Part shown: positions 279-63,973 of the stretch, piece after piece | How the letters are laid out: the number at the start of each line of letters is the position of its first letter | Position numbering within the stretch: the first letter of the stretch is position 1 | NCBI RefSeq assembly: GCF_902713615.1 | Contig: NW_024055760.1 | Coordinates: 124,001 to 188,000, forward strand | From: Scyliorhinus canicula | Taxonomy: Eukaryota | Length of the DNA: 64,000 nt | Direction: 5' to 3' | The notes under the pieces: generated by a model | Database searches by the model: none | What the model was told of the DNA's origin: nothing | What the model saw: the letters and a program-made list of their open reading frames with translations, nothing else | Translations under genes and position numbers: made by a program

Positions 279-280
279 TA

Positions 281-11580: not shown

Positions 11581-12005
11581 GTAAGCGGATCATATTCAAT
11601 AAGATAATGGAGAAACTTTAGCACATTTTGTTAATATTGGGTTAGATCTCAAACACTTGTGCAGAAGACGGTACAAACTGCAGACATTAGAATAGATAGA
11701 ACCGAGATTAAACATCGTAAAAACACACGTTCTGTATTTAAACTAACCCCGCCACTCAGTATCCTCAGCAAATAAACATCAAATCACAGCAAACAGGGAC
11801 TGAATCCCTCAGCAGCATCTTTCTGTCAAGAAACCGCGGGATTCTATATCCCCCTTTCAGCAGAATCAAATGAAACATTGCAACAACATCGCAATACATG
11901 ATCCACCAAAACACATTTCAGTGAACGAATGGATTTTGAAAATGCAGAAAAATATAAAACAAATACTCAAGTAAAACAGTTGGTAAATGACGGAATGGTT
12001 CTTAC

Positions 12006-12053
12006 CTGCAGTCACCGTCACCATGGTGCCTTGTCCCCAGTAGTCCATGGCGT
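12006..12053 (-). other. IGHJ: IgH J segment (JH): AMDYWGQGTMVTVTA
   Basis: WGQG motif; GTAAG splice donor at 12005-12001; 5' RSS GGTTATTGT (12092-12084) + 23 bp + CACTGTG (12060-12054). Confidence 0.97.
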
Positions 12054-12437
12054 CACAGTGTTACATTCCCTGGGCTGCTCCATACAATAACCGCACCTGC
12101 ACAAAATAGACAGAAATCCACCATTATTTTAAATATTCACAAACCAACGGCAAAGAAAATTCACGATTAATTTTCAGGAAATTATATGAATATTTGTGGA
12201 TACCGTTATCGCTTCATAAATGACTGAATGTTTTATATTTCAGACATGGAAATGCTATTGAAAACACCAACTGTGACTAAATAACGACCACCAAATTTCC
12301 ATATTAATTCTTATCATTTTGTCAGTGCTGGACAGTAATACATCACTGTAAATAAAGTTGGATTGTAAAAGCGAACACTGAGGCAGCCTCAGTTAATTAG
12401 TGCTGAGGGGCTTTTTGTATTGACAGTAACTGCTGTG

Positions 12438-12447
12438 CCCCAGTTGT
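12438..12447 (-). other. IGHD: IgH D2 segment ACAACTGGGG with 12/12 RSSs
   Basis: V-side RSS: heptamer 12448-12454, 12 bp, nonamer TCAAATACT 12467-12475. J-side RSS: CACAGCA 12437-12431, 12 bp, ACAAAAAGC 12418-12410. Confidence 0.93.
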
Positions 12448-12811
12448 CACAGTGAGACACAGCGTGTCAAATACTGCGGCAGACTGTTGACTAAAATACA
12501 GAGATTTAAATTCACTGCTCCCTCAAAAACTAACTCTGTCTCTTCCAAGAGCGAATGGGTGAGTTATTTCAGCTTGTCCTGGTCATTACATTTATAAAGA
12601 GGACCAGAACACTTTTAAACCCTCTGTGCAGATATAGTGTGTCGGTCAACAGAGATAAAGTGGAAGATTTTTATACCTTTTTATAAACTAATATTGTGTT
12701 TTATTTAAGCCTCATTTAAGTTGAAAATCCTGCTGTGGCCCTGATCACCAATTTGAACAAGCTCTTTCACTGAGGTTTTTGTATGAGGATGTCGCTGTGC
12801 ACAGCACTGTG

Positions 12812-12823
12812 ACCCACTGTAGT
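12812..12823 (-). other. IGHD: IgH D1 segment ACTACAGTGGGT with 12/22 RSSs
   Basis: V-side RSS: CACAGTG 12824-12830, 12 bp, ACAAAAACT 12843-12851. J-side RSS: CACAGTG 12811-12805, 22 bp, ACAAAAACC 12782-12774. The core matches the shark IgM D1 motif as recalled. Confidence 0.95.
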
Positions 12824-13259
12824 CACAGTGACAGACACCCGCACAAAAACTGCACTCACTCTCTGTTCAATCCTGCCGCTCAATATTCACTTCAAATACA
12901 CGTTTAGTTCTGATCCAATTTATAATTTGACAGCAGTTTATAAAACCCAATGTACATACACTTTCTCCAAGTATCAGAAATAATAAAACCAGGATATAGG
13001 CAAGTCTCTAATTGCTGAAACTGTGAACAGTAAATATAAACAGACAAAAGCTCATCCTATTAGATCGATTGGTTTGTTAAGTTTTACAGTTTAATTTTCT
13101 CTGTGTTAGTTATGTAAGAAGCAGCGTGTGCTTTGACTCTGATCACTGACATTTATATTACATTTGGATCAAGTACTGACCTTCAGATTAAGGTGCAAGT
13201 TGTTGAATTTCCTCTCGAGCTGTTCTTGTGCGGGTCCAGCCCTGGTTCCTCTCGCTGTG

Positions 13260-26512: not shown

Positions 26513-29500
26513 TCTTTATTTGCTGACAGGTAGAGTAACGATGGGCCGAGGAGACTCCTTCTGTGCTGTGAAATGCTACCTACCTTTGAAAATCCCTCCA
26601 CACTCTGGATTTACCTAAAGAACCTTCTCTGGACTGCCTCCAAAATATCTTTCCTTACATAAGGAGACCAAAACTGATCACAACATTACAATATGACCTG
26701 GTGGAATTTGTACTCCTGTGTCTGGAGTATTAGTTCAGGCCTCCAGATTACCAGTTTTGTAATAATATTGCGAGACTATCCCGAAGACTGTAATATCCCC
26801 CCATCGAAAAGATGGAACAATTGGATCATGTGCGGAGGTATCTATTGTGGGAGGTGATAGTGATTCCACAGAGAGAATCATCATGGTTTGCATTTTGACA
26901 TTCTGAAATATTGCTCGGTGAATCTAAAGTTCAAACTATGGGTCCAGTCTTACATGGGTCAATTTAATTTTCAGAGGCTGGTCTTTTACTAGTCTTAGGT
27001 CCTATTCTGACACGATGGCAATGGTGATAGGGAATTCCACAGGCTCCATATAAAATATCAGTTATTCCAAAAATAGCACACCAGGGTCAGTCTCTGTTTA
27101 TATTTTACCGGACCATATTCCTGTTGCCTGTCACGATATTCTAAATGATTGTATATATTTGCTTGTTTGTACGAGTACAATCATTGTTGATTTGGAGATT
27201 ATATTAATTCTTGTTGATACTTATAAGTAGTTCTATGAAATTTGTATTTGCTCTGCTATCATGTGGGTAATATTGAGTTTAATATTTTACCACCGTCCCA
27301 GTAATGTACTAGACTTGAGGGACAGGTCTACATGTGAGCATCGCTGCACAGCACTTTCCAAAAGTTAATGGAAATCTCTGTTATGTTCAAAATGATGAAT
27401 TTACTCTTGTATTACACTCTATCCATTGGAAACTGGTTTTCATGGTGAGGATTTTTTTTCTGCCTCGTTTTATATTCACTAAACGCCTAATATACTGGCA
27501 GTGTGAGGCAGATCAGTGCTCTCACAGAATCACTAGAATGGCTCCCACAGGATAAATGTCCACACAATCATAGAACTCTCATCTGGTTAAGAACAGCAAG
27601 TGAATTCACTTCAAAAAGGGATTGGCCGTTCACGCAGTTGTGCATATAAAATATTGTTCTGGAGTTTTGCAACTGTAATTTATCAAGACGTTATGTTATG
27701 TTCAGAATTAATTGTTTTGCTTTGCGATGTCTTCATGCGTCTCGGCCCTAAGCTCTGGTATTCATTCCCCACTCCTCTTTACCTCAATTCCCTTAATAAA
27801 ATCATCCCATATAACCTGCCTCGTCGACCAAGTTTTTAATCATCTGTCCTAATAAGTCTTTACACATATATTAATCCAGACCCTGCAGCAGGAATGACTG
27901 CAAGAGACCCTACCTCAGTTTATAATATTCCAGACCCTGAATCAATAATCACTGCTCTATATCATTTAAGGGCAATCAACCTTTGTATCAGTAATTTCTG
28001 CACTAGAACCTGTTTCGATTTATGCTAGTTGAGACCTTGCATTAGTAATCACTGCACTATATCCAATCTCAGTAGCACTGTTGTTTCACAGCGCCAGAGT
28101 CCCAGTCAGTGCGGAGTCGGCACGTTCTCCCCGTGTCTGTGGGGTTTGCATCGGGTGCTCCGGTTTCCTCCCACAAGTCCCGAAAGATGTGCAGTTCTGT
28201 AATTTGGACATTCTGAATTCTCCGTCTGTGCACCCAAACAGGCGGCGGAATGTGGCGACTGGGATCTTTTCACAGTGACTTCATTGTAGGGCTACTTGTC
28301 AGCTTACTTGTGAAACAAATATTATTAGATTAGTTTAGGTTAATCTCCACCCCATATGAGTAATAATCGTTTTAGACCTTGGCATGGAGTCATGGAGAGT
28401 TAGCGGTTTACAATACAGAAAGATGCCCGTCACCCACCATATCTACGATGGCAGTCAGGTACCTGTCTATTGTAAGATAGTCCATAGATGGTCTTCCTAC
28501 CATAAAACCATAAGGCACAGGAGCAGAATTCGAAGATTAGGCGAATCGAGCGTGCTCCGCATTCAATCACGACTGTTATGTTTCTAATAGCCTATCTCCT
28601 GCCTTCTCGCCAGAACCCCTGATCCCCTTATTAATCTAGAAACTATCTATCTCTGTTAGCCTGGTTAGAAAGAGGGAACGATCCTTCGGCACTGCCACAT
28701 CAAATCCTCACCACCCTGTTCAGCTCAGGTTAGATACAGGGTAAATGTTTCTCTACAGTGTTCATTAAACACTACAAGGTAATTGAATGCTCCAACCACA
28801 TTTGAGAGTAAAACTCCCTCTATGTATTCCAATTCATTGGATTCGATCCATTTAGTTGGAAGCCAATGGGGTGAGATTGGGCTGAGAGATTATATTCGGC
28901 ACATGTTGGCTTCATGTTGTCGATTAAAGGCAGTGACCCATCGTGGAGAGACATGAGACAGAACCAGTTAGGAAAAAGGGACAGATATCAGATACAGGAG
29001 AACTGGAAAACTCTACTAACACATTTGGCGTGTCATTATATTTCGAGATTAGAGGGAATCTTTCCTAATTCTGAACATGGATATCATGATGATCTTTTTC
29101 TCATATAACTGACGAAGAATCAAATGTCAAAAACAATCATTACTGGAATCCGTTGATCTATTTGCGTCTTTGCCTCTATTTCAGTGCTGTATCGGTGGGG
29201 AAATAGTTGTTGTGCTTTTGTCAGTGTATAATCTAATCTGAGACTTCTATTTCTGTGTTTATTTACATAAACACCTCACTGGTTACAATGAAGTGTTCGT
29301 ATCAACAAAACGAACAGTCATTTATTGATTAAGTTCAACTTAAAATAGCGGTTTATTTTAAGAATATTGACAGTTGGTTGAAACGTATAGAAACATCCAT
29401 TAGAACAGATGTTACTTTACTTGAAATGAAAAAATAAAGTTAAATTAAGTATTAATTCTGAAAGTTCTGATGCCTCAATTAATAAATCATCTTTAACCAG

Positions 29501-30408
29501 GCTGTTATTCCACTGAATATTAATTTAATTGAAACATTAACCGATTTAAAGGAGATAAATTAAAACATCAGGCAGAGGAGTGACCCATAGTCACATTAAT
29601 CTCAGATCTTTCAACATATTACAACCAGCATTTTAAAATGTAACATGCGTGGAAAGAGCTTGCTTTTGTAAAACGCTCTACCCGACCTCAGGTCATCCCA
29701 ACGCCCTTAAAACTCACTGATATATTTTAGCTGAATTTAGTCGCTGCTCCAATGCTGGAAACAGAGCAGGGAATTTGTGCACAGCAAGCTCCAACAAACT
29801 GAGATGTGATAAGTGACCAGCTAATCTGTGATTTTAGTTCAAGAACGGACATTGGTCGAAGATACTGGGAAAAGCAGATTTACTCTTTACAATTATGTCA
29901 TTGAGGTAATCCACCTGAAATGTGAATCTGTTCTCTCTCTGCTGATGCTCACTGACCTGCTGAGCAGCCTTTTTTTGTTTTTGTTTTAGATTTCCGGAAT
30001 CTGCAGCACTTTGCACAGTTTTTAACATTCATTCCCGGCCTATGACCGTCACTGGCAAAGTCAGCATTAACTGCCCATCCTGAGAAGCCGGATGTGAACC
30101 ACCTTTTAGATAAGGTGCACTTCATACGGTTGAATTCACATCTGACTTTCTGTGGCAGCAGACCTTGAACTGATTGGCTTGCTCGGCAATATCAGAGATA
30201 GTTATGCGTCAACCACATCACTGCTGAACTAGTCACATAGAGGCCAGACAGGGTAAGGAGGGAAGATTTCTTCTCCTGAAGGATATTGGTGAACCTGCTG
30301 GGCTTTGGGAAATTTCAAGAGCTTCATGAGTATTATGAATGACGCAACAATTTTATTTCTGATTTATTAATTCATTCAATTGAAAGTCCCCCAGCTGCCA
30401 TAAAACCA

Positions 30409-33969: not shown

Positions 33970-35300
33970 CCTGAGGGATAGGATCTATTCACATTTGGAA
34001 GAAAATAGACTTATCAATGATAGGCAGCATGGTTTTGTTCAGGGAAGGTCATGTCTTACAAACCTAATAGAATTCCTTGAGGAAGTGCCAAAGTTAATTG
34101 ATGAGGGAAGGGCTGTAGATGTCATATACAGGGACCTCAGTAAGGCGTTTGATAACGTTTCCCATGGCAGATTGATGGAAAAAGTGAAGTATGGTGTTCA
34201 GGGTGTATTAGCTAGATGGATAAAGAACTGTCTGGGCAACAGGAGACAGAGAGTAGTGGTGGAAGGGAGTGTCTCAAAATGGAGAAAGGTGACTAGTGGT
34301 GTTCCACAGGGATCCGTGCTCGGACCACTGTTGTTTTTGATATACATAAATGATCTGGACGAAGGTATATGTGGGCTGATGAGCATGTTGCAGATGATAC
34401 TAAGATTGGTGGAGTTGCAGATAGCGAGGAGGACTGTCAGAGAATACAGCAAAATACTGTTAGATTGGCGAGTTGGGCAGAGAAATGGCAGATGGAGTTC
34501 AATCCAGGCAAATGCGAGGTGATGCATTTTGGAAGATCTAATTCAAGAGCGGACTATATGGTCAATGGAAGAGTCCTGGGGAATATTGATGTACAGAGAG
34601 ATCTGGGAGTTCAGGTCCATTGTACCCTGAAGGTGGCAACGCAGGTCGATAGAGTGGTCAAGAAGGCACACAGCATGCTTGCCTTCATCCGACGGGGCAT
34701 TGAGTATAAGAGTCGGCAGGTCATGTTACAGTTGTATAGGACTTTGATGAGGCCACATTTGGAATATTGCGTGCAGTTCTGGTCACCACATTACCAGAAG
34801 GATGTGGATGCTTTAGGGAGGGTGCAGAGGAGGTTCACCAGGATGTTGCCTGGTATGGAGCGTGCAAGCTATGAAGATAGGTTGAGTAGATTAGGATTGT
34901 TTTCGTTGGAAAGTCGGAGGTTGAGGGGGGACCTGATTGAGGTCTACAAAATTATGAGAGGTATGGACAGGGTGGATCGCAACAAGCTTTTTCCAAGAGT
35001 GGGGGTGTCAATTACAAGAGGTCACGATTTCAAGGTGAGAGGGGGAAGGTTTAAGGGAGATGTGCGTGGAAAGTATTTTATGCAGAGGGTGGTGGGTGCC
35101 TGGAATGCTTTGCCAGTGGAGGTGGTCGAGGCGGGCACGTTAGCATCATTTAAGATGACTCTGGACAGATATATGAACGGGCGGGGAACAGAGGGAAGTA
35201 GATCCTTGGAAAATAGGCGACAGGTTTAGATAAAGGATCTGGATCGGTGAAGGCTGGGAGGGCCGAAGGACCTGTTCCTGTGCTGTAATTTTCTTTGTTC
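33970..35300 (+). mobile_element. 5'-truncated CR1 LINE, RT domain with frameshift
   Basis: [58 protein letters not shown] and TRGHDFKVRG motifs; CR1-type 3' tail. Confidence 0.95.
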
Positions 35301-44210: not shown

Positions 44211-44219
44211 CTATGTGTC

Positions 44220-44254
<35 letters not shown>

Positions 44255-48948: not shown

Positions 48949-49398
48949 ATGTTCTCCTCATATTGCTTTATGGTGATTCTCATCATCCTGCCCAGTGAGT
49001 CAATATTTACTATAATATTCAATATCACACATACACATGTTCCATATGTTATGTTCACTCCCAGACGTTTGAAACATTATGTGTCTTGTTACAGGAACAA
49101 ATGGCGAAGACGCAGTGTTCCAGGATCGATCTGAATTAAAGGTTCTGGAAGGACAGAACGTAACACTGGATTGTAGATACTCGACAGCTGCTCTTCAAAC
49201 TCTGTTCTGGTACATCCAGTATCCCGGGAAAGCTCCAAAATATTTAATGGCAATATATAGCTCTGGGGATGTAAATATTTCGCCAAATTTACCAGCGAGG
49301 ATCTTGGCGGTTTTGCATAAAGAAAACACAACGGTTCCTTTAACTATCGCCGGGGCCCTTCTCTCCGACTGTGCCGTGTATTTCTGTGCCATGTTGCC
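48949..49398 (+). CDS. TRAV/TRDV: TCR alpha/delta V segment, family A; leader 48949-48994, V exon 49095-49398
   Basis: MFSSYCFMVILIILP/RTNGEDAVFQ...TLDC...WYIQYPGKAPKYL...DCAVYFCAML; RSS CACACTG (49399-49405) + 23 + ACAATAACC (49429-49437). Confidence 0.93.
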
Positions 49399-49462
49399 CA
49401 CACTGCACAGAGATATAGCAGATGCCGTACAATAACCCCACACTGAGAGTTCCAGTTAGTGC

Positions 49463-51816: not shown

Positions 51817-52276
51817 GGCAGGTGGTTTAGATTTCAGCTAACAAATCAGAATATTTTAAATATTCTGAATGTTATAGACTGACATTGAAGAGTGAACATA
51901 GAATTGGGCATGTTTCGCTTATTGTGAATCTGAGGGACAGCTGCCGAGGAAGAGGATTGGCTGCTCTCTCAGAAATGGGACTAACAATGAACCAATCAGT
52001 GATGCTGGTGCCCTATTACTGCATGAACACTCAAAGCTCTTTCTGTGCTAATCCGCTTGAGGTTGGCCTTCCATCGATGCACTTACACACACACCAGACG
52101 CACGTGCAAACACTTTCGTACAGACACCCAAGCAGAGGCTCACATTTACAGTTAACCAAATGTAATCGTTACCCAGTGAGGCTAAACCTATTTCAGTATC
52201 TTTCTCTTTCTTGACCTTCTGCTCAGAGTTTTGCTTCAAATCTTTCTCTCTCTCTCTCACACACACTATCCCCCAT

Positions 52277-52495
52277 ATGCTCTCCTTCCATGTGCTTGTG
52301 ATAATCCTGATTATTTTGCTGACAGTCTGGTCTCAATAAAACTCGAGAGGAATCTGTAGGTATAGTATTATTTATTTTTAATCAACTTGCAAGGCTGACC
52401 CGCTCTATAGAGATTCAGAACACATACAGTCTCCTGAAGCTCCCAGAACCGACTGAGGACCAAGTCAAAGAGATCTCTGCACATATTCAAACGGC
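52277..52495 (+). pseudogene. Truncated V pseudogene cut by a CR1 fragment
   Basis: Leader-like MLSFHVLVIILIILLT; acceptor 52393; DSEHIQSPEAPRTD*GPSQRDLCTYS; CR1 sequence follows (about 52496-52680, minus strand). Confidence 0.45.
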
Positions 52496-53885
52496 ATCAC
52501 GTTTCACATACAAGATTCCCATAGGTCATCCTATACACCTCCTGACCTGGCCATATAGCCTGAATGGTTCACTTCGGATTCCTCAACCATGGGCCTCTTG
52601 TTACCCAGCATCCTTTTCACCATCCTCTGCACGAGGCTCCCCTCCACCTTTCTGGCCATGCTTTGCTGAATTCCTTTGTTATTTGTCTGTGAACTCACTA
52701 CCATCAGACCGGCTCTATCATCTACATTATTCTAACTAATAATCCTACTTTATATCACATTCGTTTGTTCAATTCCTATCCGATGCCACGAATGGGTCAT
52801 GTGCAGCAATTTCCCCAACAGCACAATCGTTTCAGAATGGAAATGAGAACAGCAAACGGAGGCTGCGCCCCGAGACACCGCAGATTCTAAACTAATCAGA
52901 CTGTGCGGCTGGTATCATCTGCAGGCGGGATTGCAGGAGCGGAAATAGCGACGGTTGAATCTCTGGAGACTTGTGAGCATCCTGCACCTGTTCACTGCTC
53001 ATGTGAGTGAGGGACTGGCATGCATCGCCCAGAAGTATCAAAAATTAGGGAACGGAATGAACATTCGGCACATGCCTATTTGAAAATGCTGTCCCAATCG
53101 TCTTTCGCACACCACATTTTCCATATTGCTTTCCATTCTCAGATTATGAAAGTCACTTTTTGGCAGTTCTTATTGAATCTGCTTTCATCATTTTCGCGTT
53201 GTGTTCTAGATGTTAACAAATCGGAATATTATGAATAAATACATCATTCTCTATCATATTTTTCTATCAAATCGGGATGATTTGTCATTGGATCTGCTGC
53301 TAATGGGAACAATTACAGCAAAACGATTTGAGTCTTCCTTCTACCTCTATTCTTACAAGCAAATTAACCCAGAATTCTCTGGTCTTTGCATAAACGGCCC
53401 TCGTCCCTGTTAATATTTAAATATATAACATCTTTCTCCAACGTCCTAATACTACTCCTCATTTGTCGTGCACAGGATTTGGAAAGAAACGGGCAGCAAA
53501 GATTTCATCGATTTAGTGTCCGTTTCTGACACAAACATCAACAGTAGTAAAAACTGTTTCCTAGCAGATCTAGTTTAGATTTCTGGGAGACATTCATGTC
53601 TTTTTGTGTATTTCAATGCACCCTCAATCCATTCAGTGGCTGCATTCAAATAGGAATGAAACTATTCCGGCACCAGAAGGTGCCAACTTCAAACATGGGG
53701 ATGATGAAGTTCCGTGACGGCACCGTCAAAACCAATAGACGTCGTGGTCTGAGTGATGTCAGAGTGGGCCTGGTCCTCTGCAGTGTGTGGGTGGAACAAT
53801 GAGCTGAACAGAGCCCGGGTTCCCTCTCGGCTTCTCAATCTCTGCCTCATTCCATTCCCATTCACTCAGAGAGGTTCAGTCAGAC

Positions 53886-54391
53886 ATGTTTCTGTTAATA
53901 CTGGCGGCCCTGTTGGACGGTAAGTAATGGATAATGGTCGTCAAGCCAGATTAGCAGTTTCTGGATTGCAATTACATTGAATATAATTAACGATCAGAAA
54001 TATCCACATAGTTGAGTTTCCACAAACTCACAGATATACAAACAAATTTAGGTGAATTATGTTTAACCTATCGATGTTTCATTTATTTCCCTTCGCAGGC
54101 GGGCGAAGTGCAGATGCAATAACTCAATCACCGGTGACAAAAACCGTGTCAGAAGGGGTTTCGGTGCGGCTGGATTGTGAATATACAGACTCGAATATGC
54201 AGTACATGCAATGGTATCATAAGAAATCGGCACAGCCACCAATCTGGATTATTAGCAAATTATTACATCTGAAGGATGATGCAGTTTCAGGACGATATCT
54301 AGCGGCTGCTGACAAGTCTAAACAGAACGGTTACCTCAATATCAGCGATCTCAGTGTGGAGGACGGGGCGGTCTATTACTGTGCAGTGAGG
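53886..54391 (+). CDS. TRAV/TRDV: TCR alpha/delta V segment, family B; leader 53886-53919, V exon 54099-54391
   Basis: MFLLILAALLD/GGRSADAITQSP...LDC...WYHKK...EDGAVYYCAVR; RSS CACAGCG (54392-54398) + 23 + ACAAAAACC (54422-54430); AGTGATGTCA decamer at 53752-53761. Confidence 0.93.
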
Positions 54392-54499
54392 CACAGCGTT
54401 AGATAACAGCTGGTGCCCCGTACAAAAACCTCGGCGAGTAGTCACAGCTTCACTAAATCTGCTTTGCTGCTCCTGTCTGAGGGAATTGTTTGATCCTGG

Positions 54500-54882
54500 A
54501 TTCAGGAACACAGTCAGGTCTATTCATCATTCAGTTATATTGGTGTCTCTGCTCTTCTGCGGGTGAACAGATGAGCAGTTTGGGAAAATACGCGACTCAT
54601 TTCCATGCAGCAATGAACATGGTAAATTAAAACTTGGAATACCGGGCTACCAGCAACGGTAATAACAGCTCTCAGATGTGGAGATAATGTAGCTGGAAGT
54701 TAAAGATTGTTCTTCCAGAACAGTTAACTCAGATGAGCCCAAGGCCGCTGAGTCTACCCCGTTAGTTCCTGTAACAAAAGAGTGTGTCAATCTCTGCTGT
54801 TGTATTTCACATATGGAATTCAGAATAAGAACTTTAACAGACTGACGGAGCAGCACTATTATTGTTATCATGCAGGACCATG
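54500..54882 (-). pseudogene. Degenerate family-A V pseudogene
   Basis: TTACAG acceptor then GTNGVDSAALGSSELTVLEEQSL (cf. GTNGNDAVSQNPSELTVLEGQSV); decayed leader at about 54882-54847; 3' part unrecognisable. Confidence 0.7.
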
Positions 54883-55282
54883 GGGTCTGCTTTAGGCTTC
54901 AGTATAAAATCGATTTTTCGATCGAAAACTCATCTCTTGCCTGTTGCTGGAGAGTCACTTAGATAAGGGACGTGCTTCAGAAGGGTGCGCCCCACGGTGA
55001 GGGCTATAAAACTGCCGGAGCTCGAATACATCCACAAGTCATGAAGGCCCTGGAACGCCACAGCCTTGTATTTGTATCGTCCTGAGATTTTTTGCTGCAC
55101 TGTCACGGGGGCCAATATTACTGACGTTGCCTTTCACCCGAGTGTCGCTGGCAATCAGGGGATTGGCCGTCTCTGCGGAAGTGAAAAAAACGTCTGATCA
55201 TCAGTACCGCGCACCTGCTGCTGCGTTGAGTTGTTTACACTACTGTAGATCCTCTTGTTCCTACAGCCACACAGCTCAACTG

Positions 55283-55730
55283 TGCTGTGCCTCGGTCGCT
55301 AACAATATCTGGTTGTATACAGTTATTTATCTGTATGTTAGTCACATTAAGATAATTTATACCTTTCTGCTGCAGATTCCCGCCAAACAGCCGAAACATG
55401 AACGGTGCAGGCTACCCGGATGCTGACTGTATCTGTCAGGATCTATTGTATCGACTGGCAACTATCGTGTGACGTCACTGTCTCTTCAACCCGATTTCAG
55501 CCTCCCCGCTGTTCCGCAGGGTCCTGGTGGCTCCAGGCTGACATAAACAATCAAAACTAATCAAATAAAATTCAACACCAGCCTCATATTACCCAGCATA
55601 ACGGCCAGCCCCACCGTCATCATTGTTATTCAATTAACAATAATATCAGGTTCCACAATGCGGGGAGAATGGGGTTTTTTCTGTGAGGTGAGATGTTGAG
55701 GAGAGCTGAGTGGCGGTTCCCGCGATAGTT
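55283..55730 (-). pseudogene. Degenerate family-C V pseudogene
   Basis: Acceptor 55538 then WSHQDPAEQ...RYSQHPG (cf. WSHQDTVEQ...WYSQQPG); intron and promoter collinear with 60130-60650; leader ATG and donor lost; CACAGCA at 55289-55283. Confidence 0.75.
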
Positions 55731-56084
55731 CCTGAATTAGTTGCTCTCAGGCAATTACCTGTCAGAGCAGAAATGCCGATTCAGGTGCCACTGCACGGCT
55801 GATCAAACCAATGACAGGAATAGACCAGTGACAACAATGTTTAGAATATCACCACTCTGTCAGGGCGGGATCAACAAACGGAAACTATGACCGGGACACC
55901 GCAGACTCAAAGCTGATAAAAAAATGTGCGGCGGTCGTCAGCTGCATTCGCAAGTGAGGGAGCGGAAATAGCGAGGGGTAACCTGCACCTGCTCATTGCT
56001 CGAGTCACTGAGAACAATATAGAGAGAAGACACTTCCCTCCAGCGAGAAGGAACCAGTTTGAACTGACCCTCCCTGCCCCTATT

Positions 56085-56410
56085 TCATAGAGTCATAGAA
56101 TCCACAGTGTAGAAGCAGGCCACCCGGCCCATCGAGTTCGCACCGGTCCCCGGAAAGAGCACTCTACCCAAGCACACACCTCTATCGCATTCCCGAAACG
56201 TAACACAACCTTTGTGGGCATTTAGCATGGCCAATGCACCGAACTTGCACATCTTTGGGCTGTGGGAGGAAACCGGAGCAGCCGGAGGAAACCCACGCAG
56301 ATACGGGGAGAACGTGCAGACTCCGCACAGACAGTAACCGAAGCCGGGATTATAACCTGGGACCTTAGATCTGTGAAGCAACAGTGCTAACCACTGTGCT
56401 ACCGTGCTGC
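56085..56410 (-). mobile_element. tRNA-derived SINE
   Basis: GGGCAGCACGGTAGCACAGTGGTTAGCAC head; GATTCTATGA tail. Confidence 0.8.
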
Positions 56411-57127
56411 CCACATAAATACACGACGCGGTCGGAAATTATCGTTTTGTTTTTGAAAAACATTTTATTAAGGCATTTATGATTTTAGAACGACAATTAC
56501 AACTGTAAACATAACTCAGTGAATACCACCCAGCCAACATGGCGAACACACACACAGTTCCCCAGTCCATCCTCCTCCACTCGCTGGACTCGCCTGAACG
56601 AAACGAAACTGAACTATCTCCCCCAGCCCCCTCTAATTCAGTAACCCTCTCTTATTGTATCTGCTAACAGTTTAATTTTAATCATTGTGCTCCTGATTGT
56701 TAGCTCGGTAGCCTTGTCCTTTTAACATTTGACATACCCAGGATTCAGACAGAAGATTCCAGCGATGGTTTCCACAGATTTAGCTTAATTTTCTGGCATA
56801 AACATTAACAGTAACAAAGACAGTATCTAAATAGCTCCAATTTATATTGCTGGGTAGCATTTGAATCTTGGTATGTTTTGCAGCAAACACTGAACCCACT
56901 CAACAGGAAAATTCGATTCAACAGAATTTTCCAGCAGAAGGCGCCGAATTCAAGCACGGGCGTCACAAACCACGTAATGTTTTCTCTAAACATGTATGGC
57001 TGGGAGACCAGTGAGGTCACAATAACCCCCACCCCTCCCCCGCCTCCCAAACCCCTCCCCCTTGCAATGAGCTGAGCAGAGCCCGGGCTCCCTCTCTCCA
57101 CAATCTCTAAGAGAGATTCAGTCTGGC

Positions 57128-57625
57128 ATGTTTCTGATAATACTGGCGGCGCTGTGGCACGGTAAGTACTGGTAATAAACATCGATGCAGATTAACATGT
57201 TAATATACAGCGATGGCAATATAATTATGATCGAAAATATCTATATGATGTGCAATTGGGAGGTTTCACAATCTCACTCAGATACAAGCAAATTTACAGC
57301 AGCTCTTGATATTTAATCCTCTACCTTCACAGGCGGACTGTGCGCAGATTCAGTAACTCAGTTACCGGTGATAATAACCGCATCGGAAGGAGATTCCGTG
57401 CAGTTGAATTGTGAATATACAGACAAGAATATGTACTTCATGCTATGGTATCAGCAGAAACCGGCACAACAACCGATATGGATCATCACTAACAACATAG
57501 CGTTGAAGAAAGGTCAGCTTTCAGGACGATATCTGGCGGTTGCTGACAAGTCTAAACAGAACGGTTCCCTCAATATAAGCGCCCTCAGTGTGGAGGACGG
57601 GGCGGTCTATTACTGTGCAATGAGG
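57128..57625 (+). CDS. TRAV/TRDV: TCR alpha/delta V segment, family B; leader 57128-57161, V exon 57333-57625
   Basis: MFLIILAALWH/GGLCADSVTQLP...LNC...WYQQKP...EDGAVYYCAMR; RSS CACAGCG (57626-57632) + 23 + ACAAAAACC (57656-57664); AGTGAGGTCA decamer at 57010-57019. Confidence 0.93.
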
Positions 57626-57799
57626 CACAGCGTTAGAGAGCAGCTAGAGCACCGTACAAAAACCTCAGCGAGTATTTACAGCTCTACTAAGGTCCCTTCT
57701 GCGCGAAGAATTTGATTTCCGCTTTTCAAACGCTGTCAGGTGTATTTAGCAGGCCGTTCTTTTGGTGCTTCCACCCTTGTGCCGATAAACAATAGAGCA

Positions 57800-57985
57800 G
57801 TTTGGAGAATGTTGAGGCTTCTCATGCTGAGATATTTACAGTAACCTTAATCCCGGAATATCCACCAAGCAGCAGAGGGACGATCTCAGATGTGGAGTTA
57901 GTATAACCAGAAAGTACGGACTGTTCTTCCAGAAGCCTTAACTCAGCTGAGCCCAGGGACACCGACTCCTCGGCACCCGGCGAGT
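57800..57985 (-). pseudogene. Degenerate family-A V remnant, paralog of 54500-54882
   Basis: EESVSLGSAELRLLEEQSV; nucleotide similarity to 54660-54770. Confidence 0.6.
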
Positions 57986-59419
57986 AATGAAATGCAGAAT
58001 AGAGCAGAGGGAGGTGGTGGCAAAGTGGCATTGTCACTAAACTAGAAATCCAGAGACCCAGAGTAATTCTCTGGGGTTGACTCATAACTGCCCCCTCAAG
58101 AGCGATTGGCGATGAACCAAAAGAACAAACAATTCCTGCGCAATTTACACATGAAATGTAGAATAGCAGAGACTCATCTAACAACACTGCCAGCATTATC
58201 AGTCCGTGACATAGGGAGCACACGATGCCGGGTTTAGGTTTGAATAAAAATCGATCTGTCGATCGATAATGTAAATAAAAGTAAATTATTGCTTGAATCT
58301 GAAAAACTGGACAATTTGCAGGTCTGGCAGCATCTGTGGAGAGAGTAGGGAGCTAACGTTTGGAATCTCGGTGGCTCTTTGTCAATACGGATGTTGAGTT
58401 GATTGTGGGTTTACCGAAATACAGACCAAGCCACAAATGAGTCCCAGAAATCTAAATTGCAGCTATTTAGACACTGCCTTCCTTATTGTTAATGTTTATG
58501 TCTGAAAATGATGAGGGGCGTTGATTGGGTCGATAGGAACGAACTTTTCCACTTAGTAGAAGGGTGAATAACCAGGGGGAATAGATTAACGTTAAGATGC
58601 AGGATTTAGAGGATATTTGAGGAAACCATTTTGACCCAGAGGGTGATGGGAATCTGGGGCTGAATGCGTGAAAGGATAATCGAGGCAGAAAAACTCACAA
58701 CATTGAAGAAGCATTTAGATGAGCACTTCGAACACCATAGAATACAAGGCTAAGGACCAAACTGCTGGAATATTAGATTAGAATAGAAAGGTGTTTGATG
58801 GCCAGCGCATGCACACTGGGCAAATAGCGTCATTTTGCGCTGTAAAGCTCTTTGGCTCTGTGACTCAAAGTGGAAGGGTGGAGAGGTCCAGGGAGGAAAT
58901 TCCTGAGCTTTGTGGCCAGGCAGGTGAAGGCACGGCCAGCGATAGCGGAGTGATTAAAATCGGAGATGAAGGCTGTGAGTTCCAGATTCCCACCACCGTC
59001 TGGGTGAAAACGTTCTCCCACAAAGCCCCTCGAAATCTTCAACTCCTTACCTTTAATCTGTGCCAACTGGTTATTGACACCATTACTACGGGGGAAAGTT
59101 TCTTCCCATCTACTCCATCCATGTCTCTCATAATTATGTACACTCTGGATGAGCAGGCAGTGTTCCTTTAAGACTCTCCTTCTAACCAATCTCGTTGACT
59201 AAGCTTTTGATCATATGACTGAATATGCCCATCGTTCCTGTAAAACCCCTCGGGACAGTTTATTGTGCGAAAAGCTCGACATGAATAGAAGTTGCTGTAT
59301 TTGTTGTAGTTCAGTGACACCTGATAGTTTGCTGAGAGAGTGAGTTTTCACACCAAGATATGAACAAGAAGCAGGAGTTGTTCATCGAAGATCCATTCAT
59401 TAGTCTTACATATGTTATG

Positions 59420-59610
59420 CCTCATGGCGCCAAGGTCCCAGGTTCGATCCCGGCTCTGGGTCACTGTCCGTGTGGAATTTGCACATTCTCCCCATGTTTG
59501 CGTGTGTTTCGCCTCCACAACCCAAAGATGTACAGGGTAGGTGGATTGACCATGCTAAATTGCCCCTTAATTGGAAAAAAATAACTGGGTACTTTAAGTT
59601 AAAAAAAATG
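59420..59610 (+). mobile_element. tRNA-derived SINE, 5'-truncated
   Basis: GGTCCCAGGTTCGATCCCGGCTCTGGGTCACTG...CCCCTTAATTGGAAAAAA. Confidence 0.75.
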
Positions 59611-59731
59611 TTCTGAATGCGAGTTGCAATCGCAAACTGGTATAACTGTGCAGGTGGGCCTCACTACTGATGCTTTTTAGTTTTGTGTGTTGTTACAATT
59701 TGTATCACTGTCACTATGGAAAAGGAACTAT

Positions 59732-59755
59732 CGCTGAGGGGGCGCCCCCTGCTGA
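59732..59755 (-). promoter_or_regulatory. CTCF-like element 25 nt after the RSS nonamer, with a palindromic core
   Basis: TCAGCAGGGGGCGC on minus (59755-59742); AGGGGGCGCCCCCT palindrome at 59737-59750. Confidence 0.7.
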
Positions 59756-59820
59756 GCAGTGGGTGGAACTGCCAGTGTGGGGTTTTTGTACAGGGTCCAC
59801 CATATCTCTGTAGCAGTGTG

Positions 59821-60325
59821 GGCGCCACGGCACAGAAATACACGGCGCTGTCGGAGACCATTGTGTTACTGATTGTTAATTCGGTAGTCTTGTTCTTTTC
59901 ATCAAACGTAGAAGAAAACCGATCGTTGAGTTCGGTGTTCCTTTGCACAGTCAGCCCAATGATTCGAAGCATGTAGCTTGGAGCTTTCCCGGGCTGCTGA
60001 CTGTACCAGTACACATAAGGGTTAGGAGAACTTGTTTTCAATGTGCAGGTTAATGTGACTTCACTTTCCTCTGTAACCGTTATTTCAGATTCCTTTTGTT
60101 CCACGGTGTCTTGGTGGCTCCATTCTAACAGAAGTAACAGCAATAATGACAATCAGAGTCAGCCTCATATTAAACAATAAAACCATCAGCAACATAATCT
60201 CTGTCATTTTACCAACAATAACATCTGGGTTACAGCAGTCAGGAAGAGAATGGAGTGCCACTGGGAAGGAAATACTTACTGAGAAGTGAGATAACGATGA
60301 TGAGCGAAGCGAGATGGTTCCTCAT
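59821..60325 (-). CDS. TRAV/TRDV: TCR alpha/delta V segment, family C; leader 60325-60280, V exon 60124-59821
   Basis: MRNHLASLIIVISLL/KWSHQDTVEQ...LTC...WYSQQPGKAP...SDSAVYFCAVA; RSS CACACTG (59820-59814) + 24 + ACAAAAACC (59789-59781). Confidence 0.92.
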
Positions 60326-61559
60326 GATCCTCCTCGGGTTTGTAACTCTACAATGAGATCAATCCTCTGTCAGAGACAGAAATAAAGATCCCCGTCACAC
60401 TGCACTACTGATTCGACCAATGAGAGGAATGAACAGGCAGCAGCAATCTCTCCAGTAACACAATTGGGTCAGAATGAGAGCAGCAACCGGAAGCTGTGGG
60501 CGGGGTACCGCAGTCTGAATATTGAGTGAAGTGTGCGGTGACTTTCAGCTGCACTCGGAACTGATGGAGCGGAAATAGCGACAGTTGAATCTTCACTGGA
60601 CCGTAACCATCCTGCACCTGGTCACTGCTCAAGTCACTGAGAAGAAATATATCGGGAGGGACATGACGGACTAGAATCTAGAATCGTGGAGTCAGGGATG
60701 AGGTCGCACGATCTATATTGCCCGAGACACTTTGATTCCCAAGGGGCAGTCACATGCCAATCGACCGCTGCGCTACCGCCTCTGGCGTGTTTGTTCTGTC
60801 CATGAGACCAGAGGTTCCCAGGCATTGGCGGCTGTTGTATCCGAGACATTATCTGTCAAGAATGATTCTGTGAGTATGACCGCGCCAGCCTGTGGCTTCA
60901 TTGGCCTTTATGAGAGATTTCTCAATTTTCGTGCACGCCTCAGCTGTTAGAAAGTGCCGGCAGCGTAAGGTTTGCCAATGTCCTTTCTGCCGCCTGGGTG
61001 GATGCCGAGTGTTCTAGTCATTTCATGTTTCTAATCCCAAATGTGATTTCTACACAGCGGAGTGATTTGCTCGCTCATTTCACGACATTCAATGCTGTGG
61101 GCTTGGAGTCACATGTAGATCATGAGGTAAGGACGGCATGTTTCGTTATTTTCTGACCGTTCAGGACTTTATTGCATCGAAAGAGTTTTGACCACAATGA
61201 TGGGCCTTTTAATTCCAGATGTTATGCATTGGAATCCCACCATCTGCCGTGGTGGAATTGGCAACCTAACCTCTGGATTTCTGGCCCACCACCTTCACAC
61301 CCCAAATTATTATTATTGTTGTCGTGTTGTTGCCGATATTGCCACAAAATAGTCATGGAGATTTTCTCATTCAACCACGGTCCATAAGAGTGAAGGTAAA
61401 GCGGCAAATTGTTTGTTTTTAAACATTTCAAGATGACCACGGTGGAGATTTGACTTTTTATTCTGTTGCTCGTCGGTAAACAACATTCTGCTGAGCACCA
61501 ACTGGAAAAAGCCAGCGGTAGTTTTTGTACAGGACCTGCTCTATCTTTGAAGCACTGTG

Positions 61560-62040
61560 GGTTCAGTGCAGAGATACACCGCAGAGTCAGAGATAATTGC
61601 ACTGCTGATCCTTAGCTCTGTAATCTTGCTACTCATGTCGAACATCGAAGAGAATCGATCACTGATGTCGGGTTGTCTTCTCACTTTCTCTCCTATATTA
61701 CGAATGACATACTGTGGGGTTTGTCCAAAGTGTTGACGGTACCAGAACATATAACTTCGACGATCACTTCTTTCCATGGTGCAGGTTAGTGTGACATTAC
61801 TTTCCTCTCTCACCGCCATTTCATGGGTCGGTTGTTCTACTGCTGCTTCGTGGCTCCAATCTGACAGAAAATCATAGCTATTATCATCATGGTTAGTGTC
61901 AGCACCTCAATGAACATGACTATTATTATTTCACCAGAACGGTAACTTGGTTAGAGATCTTGGGGAGGATATTTTTTGCAGGAAAATAAATACTTACTGA
62001 GAAATGATATAATGAGGATCAGTGTGAGCTATTTCTGCAT
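61560..62040 (-). pseudogene. TRAV/TRDV: Family-C TCR V with an intact V exon (61860-61560) but TAG at leader codon 4
   Basis: Leader ATG CAG AAA TAG (62040-62029); V exon WSHEAAVEQ...LTC...WYRQH...SDSAVYLC open; RSS CACAGTG + 24 + ACAAAAACT (61528-61520). Confidence 0.88.
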
Positions 62041-62940
62041 GACGCTCCCTGAATCCGGGACCCTCCTGTCCAATAACCTACCCGTCGGAGCAAATATACA
62101 GCTTGCTTCCCCACTGCACTGGTAATCCAAACCAAAGTCGAAGAGGAAGCCACTTCAACAAGATGTTAATAACAAACGGCAGGCAATGTGGATCATAACA
62201 AGAACAGCAAGGGGAGTTTGGGGCGGGGCTGTGGCTGGTTGCATCTACAATTTGCAGTTTACAACTGTGCGAAATGTATTACCACAGCGTCCCCTGGCGG
62301 TTTCGTCTTTCATTTCGCTACTTCAAGAAGTTTGAAGCGTGTTGCATAATTATATTCAACAAGGGCAGCACGGTGTCCTATTTTTCTCGCAGTTGTAATT
62401 AGTACATTTTGTCTGATATCACTGTTCCCACTAATGCTAAAATGGGACACTGGGGGGAATTGTGTGTTCCGCATTCTGCATTTTCCTGGAACATTAACAT
62501 AAGAACTAGGAGGAGGAGTAGGCCATCTGGCCCCTCGAGCCTGCTCCGCCATTCAATGAGATCATGGCTGATCTTTTGTGGACTCAGTTCCACTTTCCCG
62601 CCCGAACACCATTGTCACTTATTCCTTTATTCTTCAAAAAACTATCTGTCTTTATCATGGAAAACATTCAATGAAGGAGCCTCAACTGCGTCACTGGGCA
62701 GGGAATTCCATAGATTCACAAACCTTTGGGTGAAGAAGTTCGTCCTGAGTTCAGTCCTAACATTGTGGAGGGAGAACTGGGCTCCGAGACGCGGAAAGCG
62801 GAGATTGGCTCACAGACAATCCTAAAGATTGAAAGGAGCCAAACAGACAGAGGGACGAACAGAGAACCGGAGATACAATAAAAGACAGACAGAGGGGGAA
62901 AGGGCTACAACTAACATTGATTGGTGCCCAATTACTGACA

Positions 62941-63356
62941 GCACTGAGAGACCAGCCAATCATACCGACAGTACTGAGAGAGCAGCCAATCATGCCGACA
63001 GCACTGAGAGACCAGCCAATCATGCCGACAACACTGAGAGACCAGCGAATCATGCCGACAGCACTGAGAGACCAGCCAATCATGCCGACAGCACTGAGAG
63101 ACCAGCCAATCATGCCGACAGCACTGAGAGACCAGCCAATCATGCCGACAGCACTGAGAGACCAGCCAATCATGCCGACAGCACTGAGAGACCAGCCAAT
63201 CATGCCGACAGCACTGAGAGACCAGCCAATCATGCCGACAGCACTGAGAGACCAGCCAATCATACCGACAGCACTGAGGGACCAGCCAATCATGCCGACA
63301 GCACTGAGAGACCAGCCAATCATACCGACAGCACTGAGAGACCAGCCAATCATGCC
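62941..63356. repeat. 30-bp minisatellite (GCACTGAGAGACCAGCCAATCATGCCGACA) x14 in a V promoter
   Basis: 14 units from 62941; 13 keep CCAAT; ends about 135 nt upstream of the V ATG. Confidence 0.95.
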
Positions 63357-63489
63357 ATTGGACAACGCCCATTCGCTTCTCAATAAATAAAGCCTCACAA
63401 TGACCTGAGTTTACTTTTTCATGTCGGAGTGGATGTGTTGATATATTTTTTAAGTTTTGTGGCTTCTGTGAAATTTTGAAGCAGCTGGC

Positions 63490-63910
63490 ATGTTCTCCCG
63501 ATGTTCTTTACTAATTCTTCTCTTGCTACCTGGTGAGTTTCTGTTTAAATAGTCAGTGTCTGTCGCCAAGGTTCGCCACCAGATATTTAACAGATGCTGT
63601 AATTTGTTGCAGGAACCAATGGCAACGACGCAGTGTCGCAGAATCCATCTGAGTTAACCGTTCTGGAAGGACAGTCCGTAAAATTGGACTGCAGTTACTC
63701 GGCAGCTAGTAATCGTAATCTGTTTTGGTACATCCAGTCTCCCGGGAATGCTCCCAAATATTTATTCACGATATATAGCACGGGAAGTACGTCTCAAGGT
63801 TTATCAGGAAGATTTTCTGCCGTTTTACACAAAGGAAACAAAACAGTCCCTTTAAATATCGCCAGGGCGCTTCCCTCCGACAACGCAGTGTATTTCTGTG
63901 CCATGGAGCC
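63490..63910 (+). CDS. TRAV/TRDV: TCR alpha/delta V segment, family A; leader 63490-63532, V exon 63613-63910
   Basis: MFSRCSLLILLLLP/GTNGNDAVSQNP...LDC...WYIQSPG...DNAVYFCAME; RSS CACACTG (63911-63917) + 22 + ACAAAAACC (63940-63948). Confidence 0.93.
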
Positions 63911-63973
63911 CACACTGCTGCAGATATAGCGGGTGCCGCACAAAAACCCCACACTGACAGTTCCAGTTATTGC

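What the first reader, a model, noticed from the sequence alone, without database searches (positions are those of the whole stretch)
12001..63948. Intact IgM-type VH-D-D-JH cassette about 35 kb from a TCR alpha/delta V array
Seen: a recombination-competent IgH V-D1-D2-J unit (12.0-13.7 kb) and 23-type-RSS TCR V genes (49-64 kb) on one molecule. Established: sharks have clustered IgH loci, and IgH V segments spliced to TCR delta constant regions have been reported in nurse shark. Inference: this tight linkage could be the cis substrate for VH-TCRdelta chimeric receptors, because the VH 23-RSS is compatible with any 12-RSS D.
Basis: partly seen in the sequence, partly recalled or inferred. Interest (0 to 1): 0.85.

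Follow-up and report, generated by a model that had tools for sequence, protein, structure and literature searches.

The report
Ordinary shark IgM gene beside TCR V genes
The flagged VH-D-D-JH unit is the front end of a complete, ordinary shark IgM heavy-chain gene, one of at least 60-73 near-copies, which sits among T-cell-receptor-type V genes as part of a repeated genome module; this Ig/TCR mixing was published in 2025, and nothing here shows this copy feeds a T-cell receptor.

Summary
On the minus strand at 12.0-13.75 kb lies an intact leader-VH(23-RSS), D1(12/22), D2(12/12), JH(23-RSS) unit. Six intact V segments with 22-24-bp-spacer RSSs lie at 48.9-63.9 kb, four on the plus strand and two on the minus. 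There are no gaps in the 144 kb I read.

The cassette is not an orphan. Cmu1-4 with the secretory tail and a TM exon follow 14.3 kb downstream of JH, just left of the window. It is a standard IgM minicluster.

It is also not special. A D1 census finds 73 such clusters on 49 contigs. The DNA 12-16 kb upstream of VH is co-duplicated in 33 of 35 scored copies. The 49-kb V family lies 32-52 kb upstream of an IgM cluster, in divergent orientation, in 15 of 22 copies.

No TCR J or C was found on the DNA I could read. A TCR J-alpha array lies on another scaffold (C108, 200-285 kb), and that scaffold carries its own IgM cluster about 155 kb upstream on the opposite strand.

IgH/TCR-alpha-delta linkage in catshark, with TCR-type V exons between IgH clusters and proximity as the explanation for VH-TCR-delta rearrangement, was published by Flajnik et al. 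2025. Other pieces of this genome were flagged the same way earlier in this scan. Use of this VH with TCR delta remains untested. Interest is low.

The parts
13691..13748 (-). IgM VH leader exon ([19 protein letters not shown]..), GT donor
   Evidence: identical in ten paralogous clusters
13260..13564 (-). VH exon, open, V-set, ends YYCAR
   Evidence: Pfam V-set E 3.4e-19
13221..13259 (-). VH 23-RSS (CACAGCG / 23 / ACAAGAACA)
   Evidence: invariant in ten clusters
12774..12851 (-). D1 (ACTACAGTGGGT) with a 5' 12-RSS and a 3' RSS with 22-bp spacer
   Evidence: exact 33-mer census gives 73 sites genome-wide
12410..12475 (-). D2 (ACAACTGGGG) with 12-RSSs on both sides
12006..12092 (-). JH with 5' 23-RSS; coding ..MDYWGQGTMVTVTA, GT donor at 12005
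1..12005 (-). Most of the 14.3-kb JH-Cmu1 intron. It continues 2.3 kb left of the window to Cmu1 (contig C368:121663-121310). Then follow Cmu2 (121161-), Cmu3 (120220-), Cmu4 plus secretory tail (117968-117483), a 550-aa RT ORF (116059-114410) and TM1 (about 112457-112239).
   Evidence: C1-set hits for Cmu1-4; Cmu4 plus tail matches Ig heavy constant mu over its full span
1918..7025 (.). 5.1 kb of 14-bp and 40-bp tandem repeats inside the J-Cmu intron, G-rich on the + strand (C-rich on the IgM coding strand)
26001..30000 (+). Non-coding block 12-16 kb upstream of VH that is co-duplicated with IgM clusters
   Evidence: 33 of 35 scored copies lie 7-21 kb upstream of an IgM D1 in the same relative orientation
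48949..49437 (+). V49: predicted leader 48949-48994, V exon 49095-49398 (..YFCAM), RSS CACACTG/23/ACAATAACC
   Evidence: Best single-domain PDB hits are TCR alpha chains. Of 20 paralogs, 16 are intact, pN/pS 0.63. 15 of 22 copies lie 32-52 kb upstream of an IgM D1.
53886..54430 (+). V54: predicted leader 53886-53919, V exon 54099-54391 (..YYCAVR), RSS CACAGCG/23/ACAAAAACC
   Evidence: nearest named ESM-Atlas clusters are TVA11 and TCR alpha/delta variable
57128..57664 (+). V57: predicted leader 57128-57161, V exon 57333-57625 (..YYCAMR), RSS CACAGCG/23/ACAAAAACC
   Evidence: in run X1 a 74-nt contig (depth 189) ends exactly at the coding end 57625
59781..60325 (-). V60: predicted leader 60325-60280, V exon 60124-59821 (..YFCAV), RSS CACACTG/24/ACAAAAACC
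   Evidence: PDB hits include human V-delta-1 and TCR alpha chains; at least 40 paralogous copies
61520..62196 (-). V61.9: predicted leader about 62196-62160, V exon to 61560 (..YLCTE), RSS CACAGTG/24/ACAAAAACT
   Evidence: five close copies and many distant ones
63490..63948 (+). V63.6: predicted leader 63490-63532, V exon 63613-63910 (..YFCAME), RSS CACACTG/22/ACAAAAACC

Best explanation
The 12.0-13.75 kb unit is the V-D1-D2-J front end of a complete germline elasmobranch IgM heavy-chain minicluster. It runs leader-VH, D1, D2, JH, a 14.3-kb intron, Cmu1-4 with secretory tail, and a TM exon, all on the minus strand. By established knowledge of shark IgH clusters it most likely rearranges within itself in B cells (VH to D1 to D2 to JH, as the 23 | 12/22 | 12/12 | 23 RSS layout dictates) and is spliced to its own Cmu.

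It lies among TCR-alpha/delta-type V segments because, in this (probably catshark) genome, IgM clusters and the DNA upstream of them have been amplified together by segmental duplication. That upstream DNA includes TCR-type V segments. This happened inside the large Ig/TCR-alpha-delta antigen-receptor complex. The adjacency is therefore the rule for this gene family, not a feature of this copy.

Shown here: the gene structure, the RSS layout, the copy number and the conserved module geometry. Inferred: intracluster rearrangement and mu expression of this particular copy, and use of the flanking V segments by TCR alpha/delta. Occasional donation of this VH to TCR delta is possible but untested.
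For: - Complete cassette with canonical RSS spacers.
- Cmu1-4, secretory tail and a TM exon downstream on the same strand. All four C exons hit C1-set. The full-span PDB hits for Cmu4 plus tail are Ig heavy constant mu, E about 1e-48.
- 45 or more cassette copies at 90-97% identity. 73 D1 sites on 49 contigs. 60 D1 elements with perfect heptamers.
- RSSs are invariant and the variation is concentrated in CDR1/CDR2 across ten clusters.
- Module geometry: upstream block paired with an IgM D1 in 33 of 35 copies at 7-21 kb; V49 family in 15 of 22 at 32-52 kb, divergent; V60 block in 7 of 40 at 47-70 kb.
- The same order recurs on C642, C284, C54, C105 and, mirrored, on C106, C620, C621 and C17.
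Against: - Expression and rearrangement of this particular copy were not shown. RNA-like runs hold 0.29-0.34 of its 31-mers, but paralogs at 93-97% identity share words.
- The TCR identity of the flanking V segments rests on similarity and RSS type. It does not rest on V-J-C transcripts or on names; the database hits were unnamed.
- Scaffold C368 is unplaced, and only 144 kb of its 1.5 Mb could be read. TCR D/J/C elsewhere on it is excluded only by a strict J pattern.
- Some of the 73 sites may be haplotig duplicates.
Confidence: 0.82

Rival explanations
1. One reading: this cassette's proximity to TCR V genes makes it a working cis substrate whose VH is rearranged to TCR D-delta/J-delta, giving VH-C-delta chimeric receptors.
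For: - The VH 23-RSS is intact and 12/23-compatible with a D 12-RSS.
- Linkage to TCR-type V segments is real.
- A sister IgM cluster lies about 155 kb upstream of the J-alpha array on scaffold C108.
- The literature reports IgM/IgW VH-to-TCR-delta rearrangements in nurse shark and attributes them to proximity (PMC12227049).
Against: - The cassette has its own D, J and Cmu.
- There are 60-73 equivalent clusters, so nothing singles out this one.
- No TCR D/J/C was found in the 144 kb read, and the J-alpha array is on another scaffold.
- On C108 the IgM cluster is on the opposite strand to the J-alpha array, so inversion would be needed.
- No chimeric transcript was seen, though the RNA data could not have shown one.
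Confidence: 0.1
2. The flanking V segments are not working TCR alpha/delta V genes. They would be orphan V segments carried along by IgM-cluster duplication, or V segments that can join the neighbouring IgM D1 and give TCR-type-V/Cmu chains.
For: - V49 copies travel with IgM clusters.
- Constraint is only moderate: pN/pS 0.63, and 4 of 20 copies are broken.
- V60 and V61.9 share the IgM cluster's strand, lie upstream of it, and have 24-bp-spacer RSSs compatible with the D1 12-RSS.
- No V of these families appeared on the J-alpha scaffold C108 among the top hits.
Against: - Most copies keep open frames, leaders and near-consensus RSSs.
- The best single-domain structural relatives are TCR alpha and V-delta-1, and the nearest named feature clusters are TCR alpha/delta variable.
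- One RNA-like contig of the V57 family stops exactly at the coding end, as a rearranged transcript would.
- V60-type segments are mostly not next to IgM clusters: 33 of 40 are unpaired.
Confidence: 0.06
3. Assembly artefact: the IgM cluster and the V array are joined wrongly on this unplaced 1.5-Mb scaffold.
For: The region is highly repetitive, with paralogs at 90-100% identity on dozens of unplaced scaffolds. That is the kind of sequence assemblers misjoin.
Against: - No N in 144 kb.
- The same IgM / upstream block / V49 / V60 order, orientation and spacing is found on at least eight other contigs, including a chromosome-size one, C17.
Confidence: 0.02

Closest known systems
Elasmobranch IgM heavy-chain miniclusters (VH-D1-D2-JH-Cmu), as first described in horned shark and found in tens to about 100 copies per genome (own knowledge; summarised in PMC12227049, section 6)
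   Same: One VH, two D and one JH within about 1.7 kb. The RSS layout is 23 | 12/22 | 12/12 | 23. Its own four-exon Cmu carries a secretory tail and a TM exon. There are many near-identical copies, differing mainly in CDR1/CDR2.
   Different: Nothing essential. The J-Cmu intron is long (14.3 kb) and carries a 5-kb short-period repeat and transposon insertions.
The antigen-receptor complex (AgRC) of Flajnik et al. [quoted passage not shown]
   Same: IgH miniclusters lie next to TCR-alpha-delta-type V exons. The paper states that such V exons lie between IgH clusters and that proximity explains VH-to-TCR-delta rearrangement.
   Different: This instance is on an unplaced scaffold. I add detail I did not find in the sections of the paper I read: at least 20 kb upstream of the cluster, and in a subfamily 50-70 kb including V49 and V60, is co-duplicated with fixed spacing and orientation. 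One such cluster lies about 155 kb from the J-alpha array.
Nurse shark IgM/IgW VH-to-TCR-delta rearrangements and TAILV (TCR-delta-associated Ig-like V), as cited in PMC12227049
   Same: A VH-type V with a 23-RSS sits in the neighbourhood of TCR V genes.
   Different: TAILV and VH-delta segments are lone V segments inside the TCR locus, without their own D, J and C. This VH has all of them. No VH-C-delta transcript was examined here.
VH-delta segments in the TCR-alpha-delta loci of frogs, birds, coelacanth and monotremes (own knowledge; mentioned in PMC12227049, section 15)
   Same: An Ig-type V physically among TCR-alpha-delta V segments.
   Different: Those are dedicated TCR-delta V segments. 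This one belongs to a self-contained IgM gene.

Membership tests
Elasmobranch IgM heavy-chain minicluster | Single split leader/VH gene with a 3' 23-RSS | tested here: met
Elasmobranch IgM heavy-chain minicluster | Two D segments, D1 with 12- and 22/23-spacer RSSs and D2 with 12/12, then one JH with a 23-RSS, a WGxG motif and a splice donor, all within about 2 kb | tested here: met
   conserved in ten paralogs
Elasmobranch IgM heavy-chain minicluster | Own Cmu1-4 exons with mu-type secretory tail and TM exon downstream on the same strand | tested here: met
   Contig C368:121663-112239, left of the window; C1-set; Ig heavy constant mu full-span hits. Only TM1 was identified.
Elasmobranch IgM heavy-chain minicluster | Rearranged and expressed as a mu chain | tested here: inconclusive
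   RNA-like runs hold 0.29-0.34 of the cassette's words, but paralogs share them.
TCR alpha/delta V gene segments | V-set exon with leader and a 3' 23-RSS, in V-only arrays without an adjacent J-C | tested here: met
   no C-type exon or J-like RSS between the V segments
TCR alpha/delta V gene segments | Closer in sequence to TRAV/TRDV than to Ig V | tested here: inconclusive
   The best single-domain PDB hits are TCR alpha or V-delta-1 for V49 and V60, but the ranking is blurred by two-domain scFv entries, and V54 is ambiguous. ESM-Atlas gives TVA11 and TCR alpha/delta variable for V54.
TCR alpha/delta V gene segments | Lie in one locus with D-delta/J-delta/C-delta and J-alpha/C-alpha | tested here: inconclusive
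   None in the 144 kb read. The J-alpha array is on scaffold C108:200-285 kb. C-alpha and C-delta were not located: PF09291 gave no credible hit.
TCR alpha/delta V gene segments | Found rearranged to TCR J and spliced to TCR C in transcripts | tested here: inconclusive
   One contig of the V57 family ends exactly at the coding end. The others are unspliced or of low depth.
Dedicated Ig-type V of TCR delta (TAILV / VH-delta) | Lone VH-type segment in the TCR locus, lacking its own D, JH and CH | tested here: not met
   Its own D1, D2, JH and Cmu are present
Dedicated Ig-type V of TCR delta (TAILV / VH-delta) | Transcripts joining the V to D-delta/J-delta/C-delta | not testable with these tools
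   This needs C-delta-anchored repertoire data. Only assembled contigs of public runs could be laid, and only once.

The most novel reading that the evidence does not exclude
The IgM cluster and its upstream TCR-type V segments are kept together as one amplified module because they work together. One version is that the VH is delivered to TCR delta by inversion. The other is that same-strand TCR-type V segments (V60, V61.9) join the cluster's D1 and give TCR-V/Cmu chains. Under either version, much of this shark's TCR-alpha/delta V repertoire (over 1000 V candidates) would have grown by hitch-hiking on IgM-cluster duplication.
Probability: 0.1. Interest if true: 0.65.

Novelty: already known. 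Interest (0 to 1): 0.25.

Why it matters
The physical mixing of antibody heavy-chain clusters with TCR-alpha-delta V genes in sharks bears on two questions: how Ig and TCR loci diverged, and how VH-TCR-delta chimeric receptors arise. That point is already published for this group of animals, including catshark.

This locus adds a clean, gap-free example. It also corrects the impression, given by this note and a sister note, that the cassette lacks a constant region. The one possibly useful extra is quantitative. The IgM cluster plus 20-70 kb of upstream DNA, TCR-type V segments included, is a repeat unit with fixed geometry. One such unit lies about 155 kb from the J-alpha array on the opposite strand. 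That geometry tells anyone testing cis VH-to-D-delta joining to look for inversional products.

Tried and rejected
- Extending the contig: 40 kb on each side was read.
- Locating C-alpha with Pfam PF09291: only marginal hits with stops, none on Ig/TCR scaffolds.
- DAD1 as a synteny marker for C-alpha: it maps to C10:106.64 Mb, away from every Ig/TCR scaffold seen, so it did not help.
- D-delta search with a 12/23 D pattern: all 60 hits were IgM D1.
- Naming the V segments by homology: two searches returned only unnamed or hypothetical shark proteins, which are germline read-throughs.
- PDB sequence searches for the V segments: rankings are inflated by two-domain scFv entries.
- A 20-kb DNA query: only one candidate region was scored.
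- RNA evidence: the runs are assembled contigs dominated by repeats. No leader-V splice joint or V-J joint was seen. There was only one contig ending at a V coding end and some unspliced coverage.
- V49 paralog dN/dS: 0.63. This does not discriminate between working genes and young, nearly neutral duplicates.
- ORFs between 14 and 49 kb: only a reverse-transcriptase fragment, no genes.
- Paper supplement with catshark coordinates: not held.

Full report
**1. What is there**

The window is G000:C368:124001-188000, on a 1.5-Mb contig of a 4.22-Gb, 646-contig genome. I infer it is a catshark. The nearest database V protein is from Scyliorhinus torazame, and an earlier follow-up on this genome calls it catshark.

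Read on the minus strand, 13.75-12.0 kb holds a textbook shark IgM front end:
- Leader exon 13748-13691, then a 126-bp intron.
- VH exon 13564-13260, open, ending YYCAR.
- VH RSS CACAGCG / 23 / ACAAGAACA.
- D1 (12 nt), flanked by a 12-RSS and an RSS with a 22-bp spacer.
- D2 (10 nt), flanked by two 12-RSSs.
- JH (..DYWGQGTMVTVTA plus GT donor), preceded by a 23-RSS.

An independent RSS scan of 144 kb recovers these sites and those of the V array. Beyond them it finds hits of one repeat family and a few isolated weak ones.

At 48.9-63.9 kb there are six open V-set exons with predicted leaders and RSSs with 22-24-bp spacers. V49, V54, V57 and V63.6 are on the plus strand; V60 and V61.9 are on the minus strand. 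More follow to the right of the window, at contig 189.3 kb (-) and 202.5 kb (+). There is no N in the window or in 40 kb of flank on either side.

**2. The cassette is not an orphan**

Forty kilobases to the left were fetched. On the same strand as JH they hold:
- Cmu1 at contig 121663-121310, which is 14.3 kb downstream of JH and 2.3 kb outside the window.
- Cmu2 (121161-) and Cmu3 (120220-).
- Cmu4 with a ..[20 protein letters not shown] tail (117968-117483).
- An inserted 550-aa reverse-transcriptase ORF.
- A TM exon (..NIWTTASTFITLFFLSISYSAAVTLVKV, about 112457-112239).

All four C exons hit C1-set. The Cmu4-plus-tail exon aligns over its whole length, tailpiece included, with Ig heavy constant mu chains (E about 1e-48).

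It also contradicts the sister note that saw no CH exon in the 12 kb downstream (s1-243638): the intron is simply longer than the window's margin.

**3. It is one of many, and its neighbourhood is copied with it**

- The 1.95-kb cassette has 45 or more copies at 90-97% identity.
- The invariant D1 5'-RSS-plus-D1 33-mer occurs at 73 sites on 49 contigs.
- Sixty D1 elements have perfect heptamers on both sides.
- Across ten clusters the leader and all RSSs are identical, and VH differences cluster where CDR1 and CDR2 lie.

I then searched with three pieces of the window's upstream DNA and paired the hits with the D1 census:

| Piece | Copies paired with an IgM D1 | Distance upstream |
|---|---|---|
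| Non-coding block, window 26-30 kb | 33 of 35 scored copies, same relative orientation | 7-21 kb |
| V49 family (89% amino-acid identity or more) | 15 of 22, always divergent | 32-52 kb |
| V60 block | 7 of 40 | 47-70 kb |

The full order IgM / block / V49 / V60 recurs on C642, C284, C54 and C105. It recurs in mirror image on C106, C620, C621 and the chromosome-size C17.

So the IgM cluster and at least 20 kb upstream form a segmental-duplication unit. For a subfamily that includes this copy, the unit is 50-70 kb and includes TCR-type V segments. V60-type segments mostly lie elsewhere, which shows that V arrays extend well beyond the IgM clusters. The recurrence on independent contigs is also the best available argument against a misjoin between 14 and 45 kb.

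**4. Are the V segments TCR alpha/delta V segments?**

Probably (about 85%), but by resemblance only.

For:
- RSSs with 22-24-bp spacers.
- CAM/CAVR/CAMR/CAV endings.
- V-only arrays with no J or C between them.
- The best single-domain PDB relatives are TCR alpha chains for V49, and V-delta-1 or TCR alpha for V60.
- The nearest named ESM-Atlas clusters for V54 are TVA11 and 'TCR alpha/delta variable'.

Weak points:
- The PDB ranking is blurred by scFv entries, and V54 is ambiguous there.
- Homology searches gave only unnamed germline read-through models.
- Among 20 V49 paralogs, 16 are intact, pN/pS is 0.63, and exon divergence (0.039) is only slightly below that of the flanks (0.046-0.063).
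- In RNA-like contig sets, one 74-nt contig of the V57 family (depth 189) stops exactly at the coding end 57625, as rearranged transcripts would. V61.9 is covered only by an unspliced 96%-identical contig, and no splice or V-J joint was reported.

**5. Where are TCR D, J and C?**

They are not in the 144 kb I could read. A strict 12-RSS-plus-FGxGT pattern gives 14 genome-wide hits and none in the reversed control. Thirteen of them form a J-alpha-like array (..GTKLIFGGGT..SYGKLIFGAGT..NTLIFGSGT) on scaffold C108 at 200-285 kb, plus strand. None is on C368.

C108 also carries an IgM D1 at 44.4 kb on the minus strand and the upstream block at 62-66 kb on the plus strand. So a sister module lies about 155 kb upstream of the J-alpha array, with the IgM gene transcribed away from it.

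From the conserved vertebrate layout, D-delta/J-delta/C-delta should lie between the two. I infer this and did not test it. In that geometry VH and D-delta point in opposite directions, so a cis join would be inversional: possible under the 12/23 rule, with the signal joint retained. How the window's scaffold is oriented to, and how far it lies from, C108 is unknown. C-alpha and C-delta were not located.

**6. Comparison with what is known**

Flajnik et al. 2025 (PMC12227049) report three relevant points. The cassette fails the defining feature of a dedicated TCR-delta Ig-type V (TAILV or VH-delta), because it has its own D, J and C. Earlier follow-ups in this scan reached the same verdict on other pieces of this genome.

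**7. Verdict**

Interest is low.

The one extra worth keeping is the fixed-geometry IgM-plus-TCR-type-V repeat unit and the opposite-strand IgM cluster 155 kb from the J-alpha array. Together they make an inversional cis VH-to-D-delta join a concrete, testable prediction.

Noticed in passing
window 1918-7025: About 5.1 kb of short-period tandem repeat inside the JH-Cmu1 intron: a 14-bp unit TGTGAGTGAGGCTG x272, preceded by a 40-bp unit x13. GC skew is +0.8 on the + strand, so the repeat is C-rich on the IgM coding strand, the opposite polarity to mammalian switch regions. I did not check whether other IgM clusters carry it.
   Followed up: no
contig C368:116059-114410 (minus strand), 7.9-9.6 kb left of the window start (L014): An open 550-aa reverse-transcriptase ORF (LINE-like) is inserted between Cmu4 and the TM1 exon of this IgM gene, on the same strand.
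   Followed up: no
G000:C108:200080-285550: A J-alpha-like array on another scaffold. The J segments at 205.7-212.3 kb recur almost identically at 275.4-279.9 kb, so the array holds an internal duplication of about 70 kb or an assembly duplication. Four near-identical ..NTLIFGSGT J segments follow at about 1.9-kb spacing.
   Followed up: partly
G000:C108:44440-44520 (-) and 62417-66395 (+): An IgM cluster with an intact D1, plus its upstream block, lies about 155 kb upstream of the J-alpha array on the opposite strand. It is the IgM cluster physically closest to TCR J segments that I found.
   Followed up: partly
G000:C17:133446655-133516270: One mirrored IgM / V49 / V module sits on a chromosome-size contig at about 133.5 Mb. 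This may be the anchor point for the roughly 48 other contigs that carry Ig/TCR modules, most of which look like unplaced scaffolds.
   Followed up: no
loci L031, L032, L038, L040 (V49 paralogs on C87, C620, C62, C517): Four of 20 V49-family copies are broken: a 1-bp deletion, an in-frame TGA, and a shared 5-bp deletion in two copies, one of which has two further 1-bp deletions. The RSS stays intact in three of the four; the alignment runs out just past the nonamer in L031.
   Followed up: partly
window 49438-49460, 59760-59780, 63949-63970: A conserved stretch (CCCACACTGAGAGTTCCAG or similar) directly follows the nonamer of V49, V60 and V63.6, and is kept in the V49 paralogs. Another note of the scan reads it as a CTCF-like site. 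Not examined here.
   Followed up: no
window 57552-57625: In run X1 a 74-nt contig at depth 189 (3 mismatches, so from a paralog) ends exactly at the last coding base of V57 before the heptamer. This is the pattern expected where junctional diversity breaks an assembly of rearranged transcripts.
   Followed up: partly
window 13918-13945: A run of about 25 C (minus-strand G) lies about 170 bp upstream of the VH start codon, next to GC-rich palindromic GGCGCC repeats and a TATTTAAAT box.
   Followed up: no
G000:C10:106640819-106643386 and C9:77106576-77106881: DAD1, the usual downstream neighbour of C-alpha in other vertebrates, is a split gene on C10. An intronless full-length copy on C9 is a likely retrocopy. 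Neither is near the Ig/TCR scaffolds in this assembly.
   Followed up: no
window 33995-34522: A reverse-transcriptase fragment (RVT_1, E 1e-15). It was the only Pfam hit among ten tested ORFs, nine of them in the 35 kb between the IgM cluster and the V array.
   Followed up: yes
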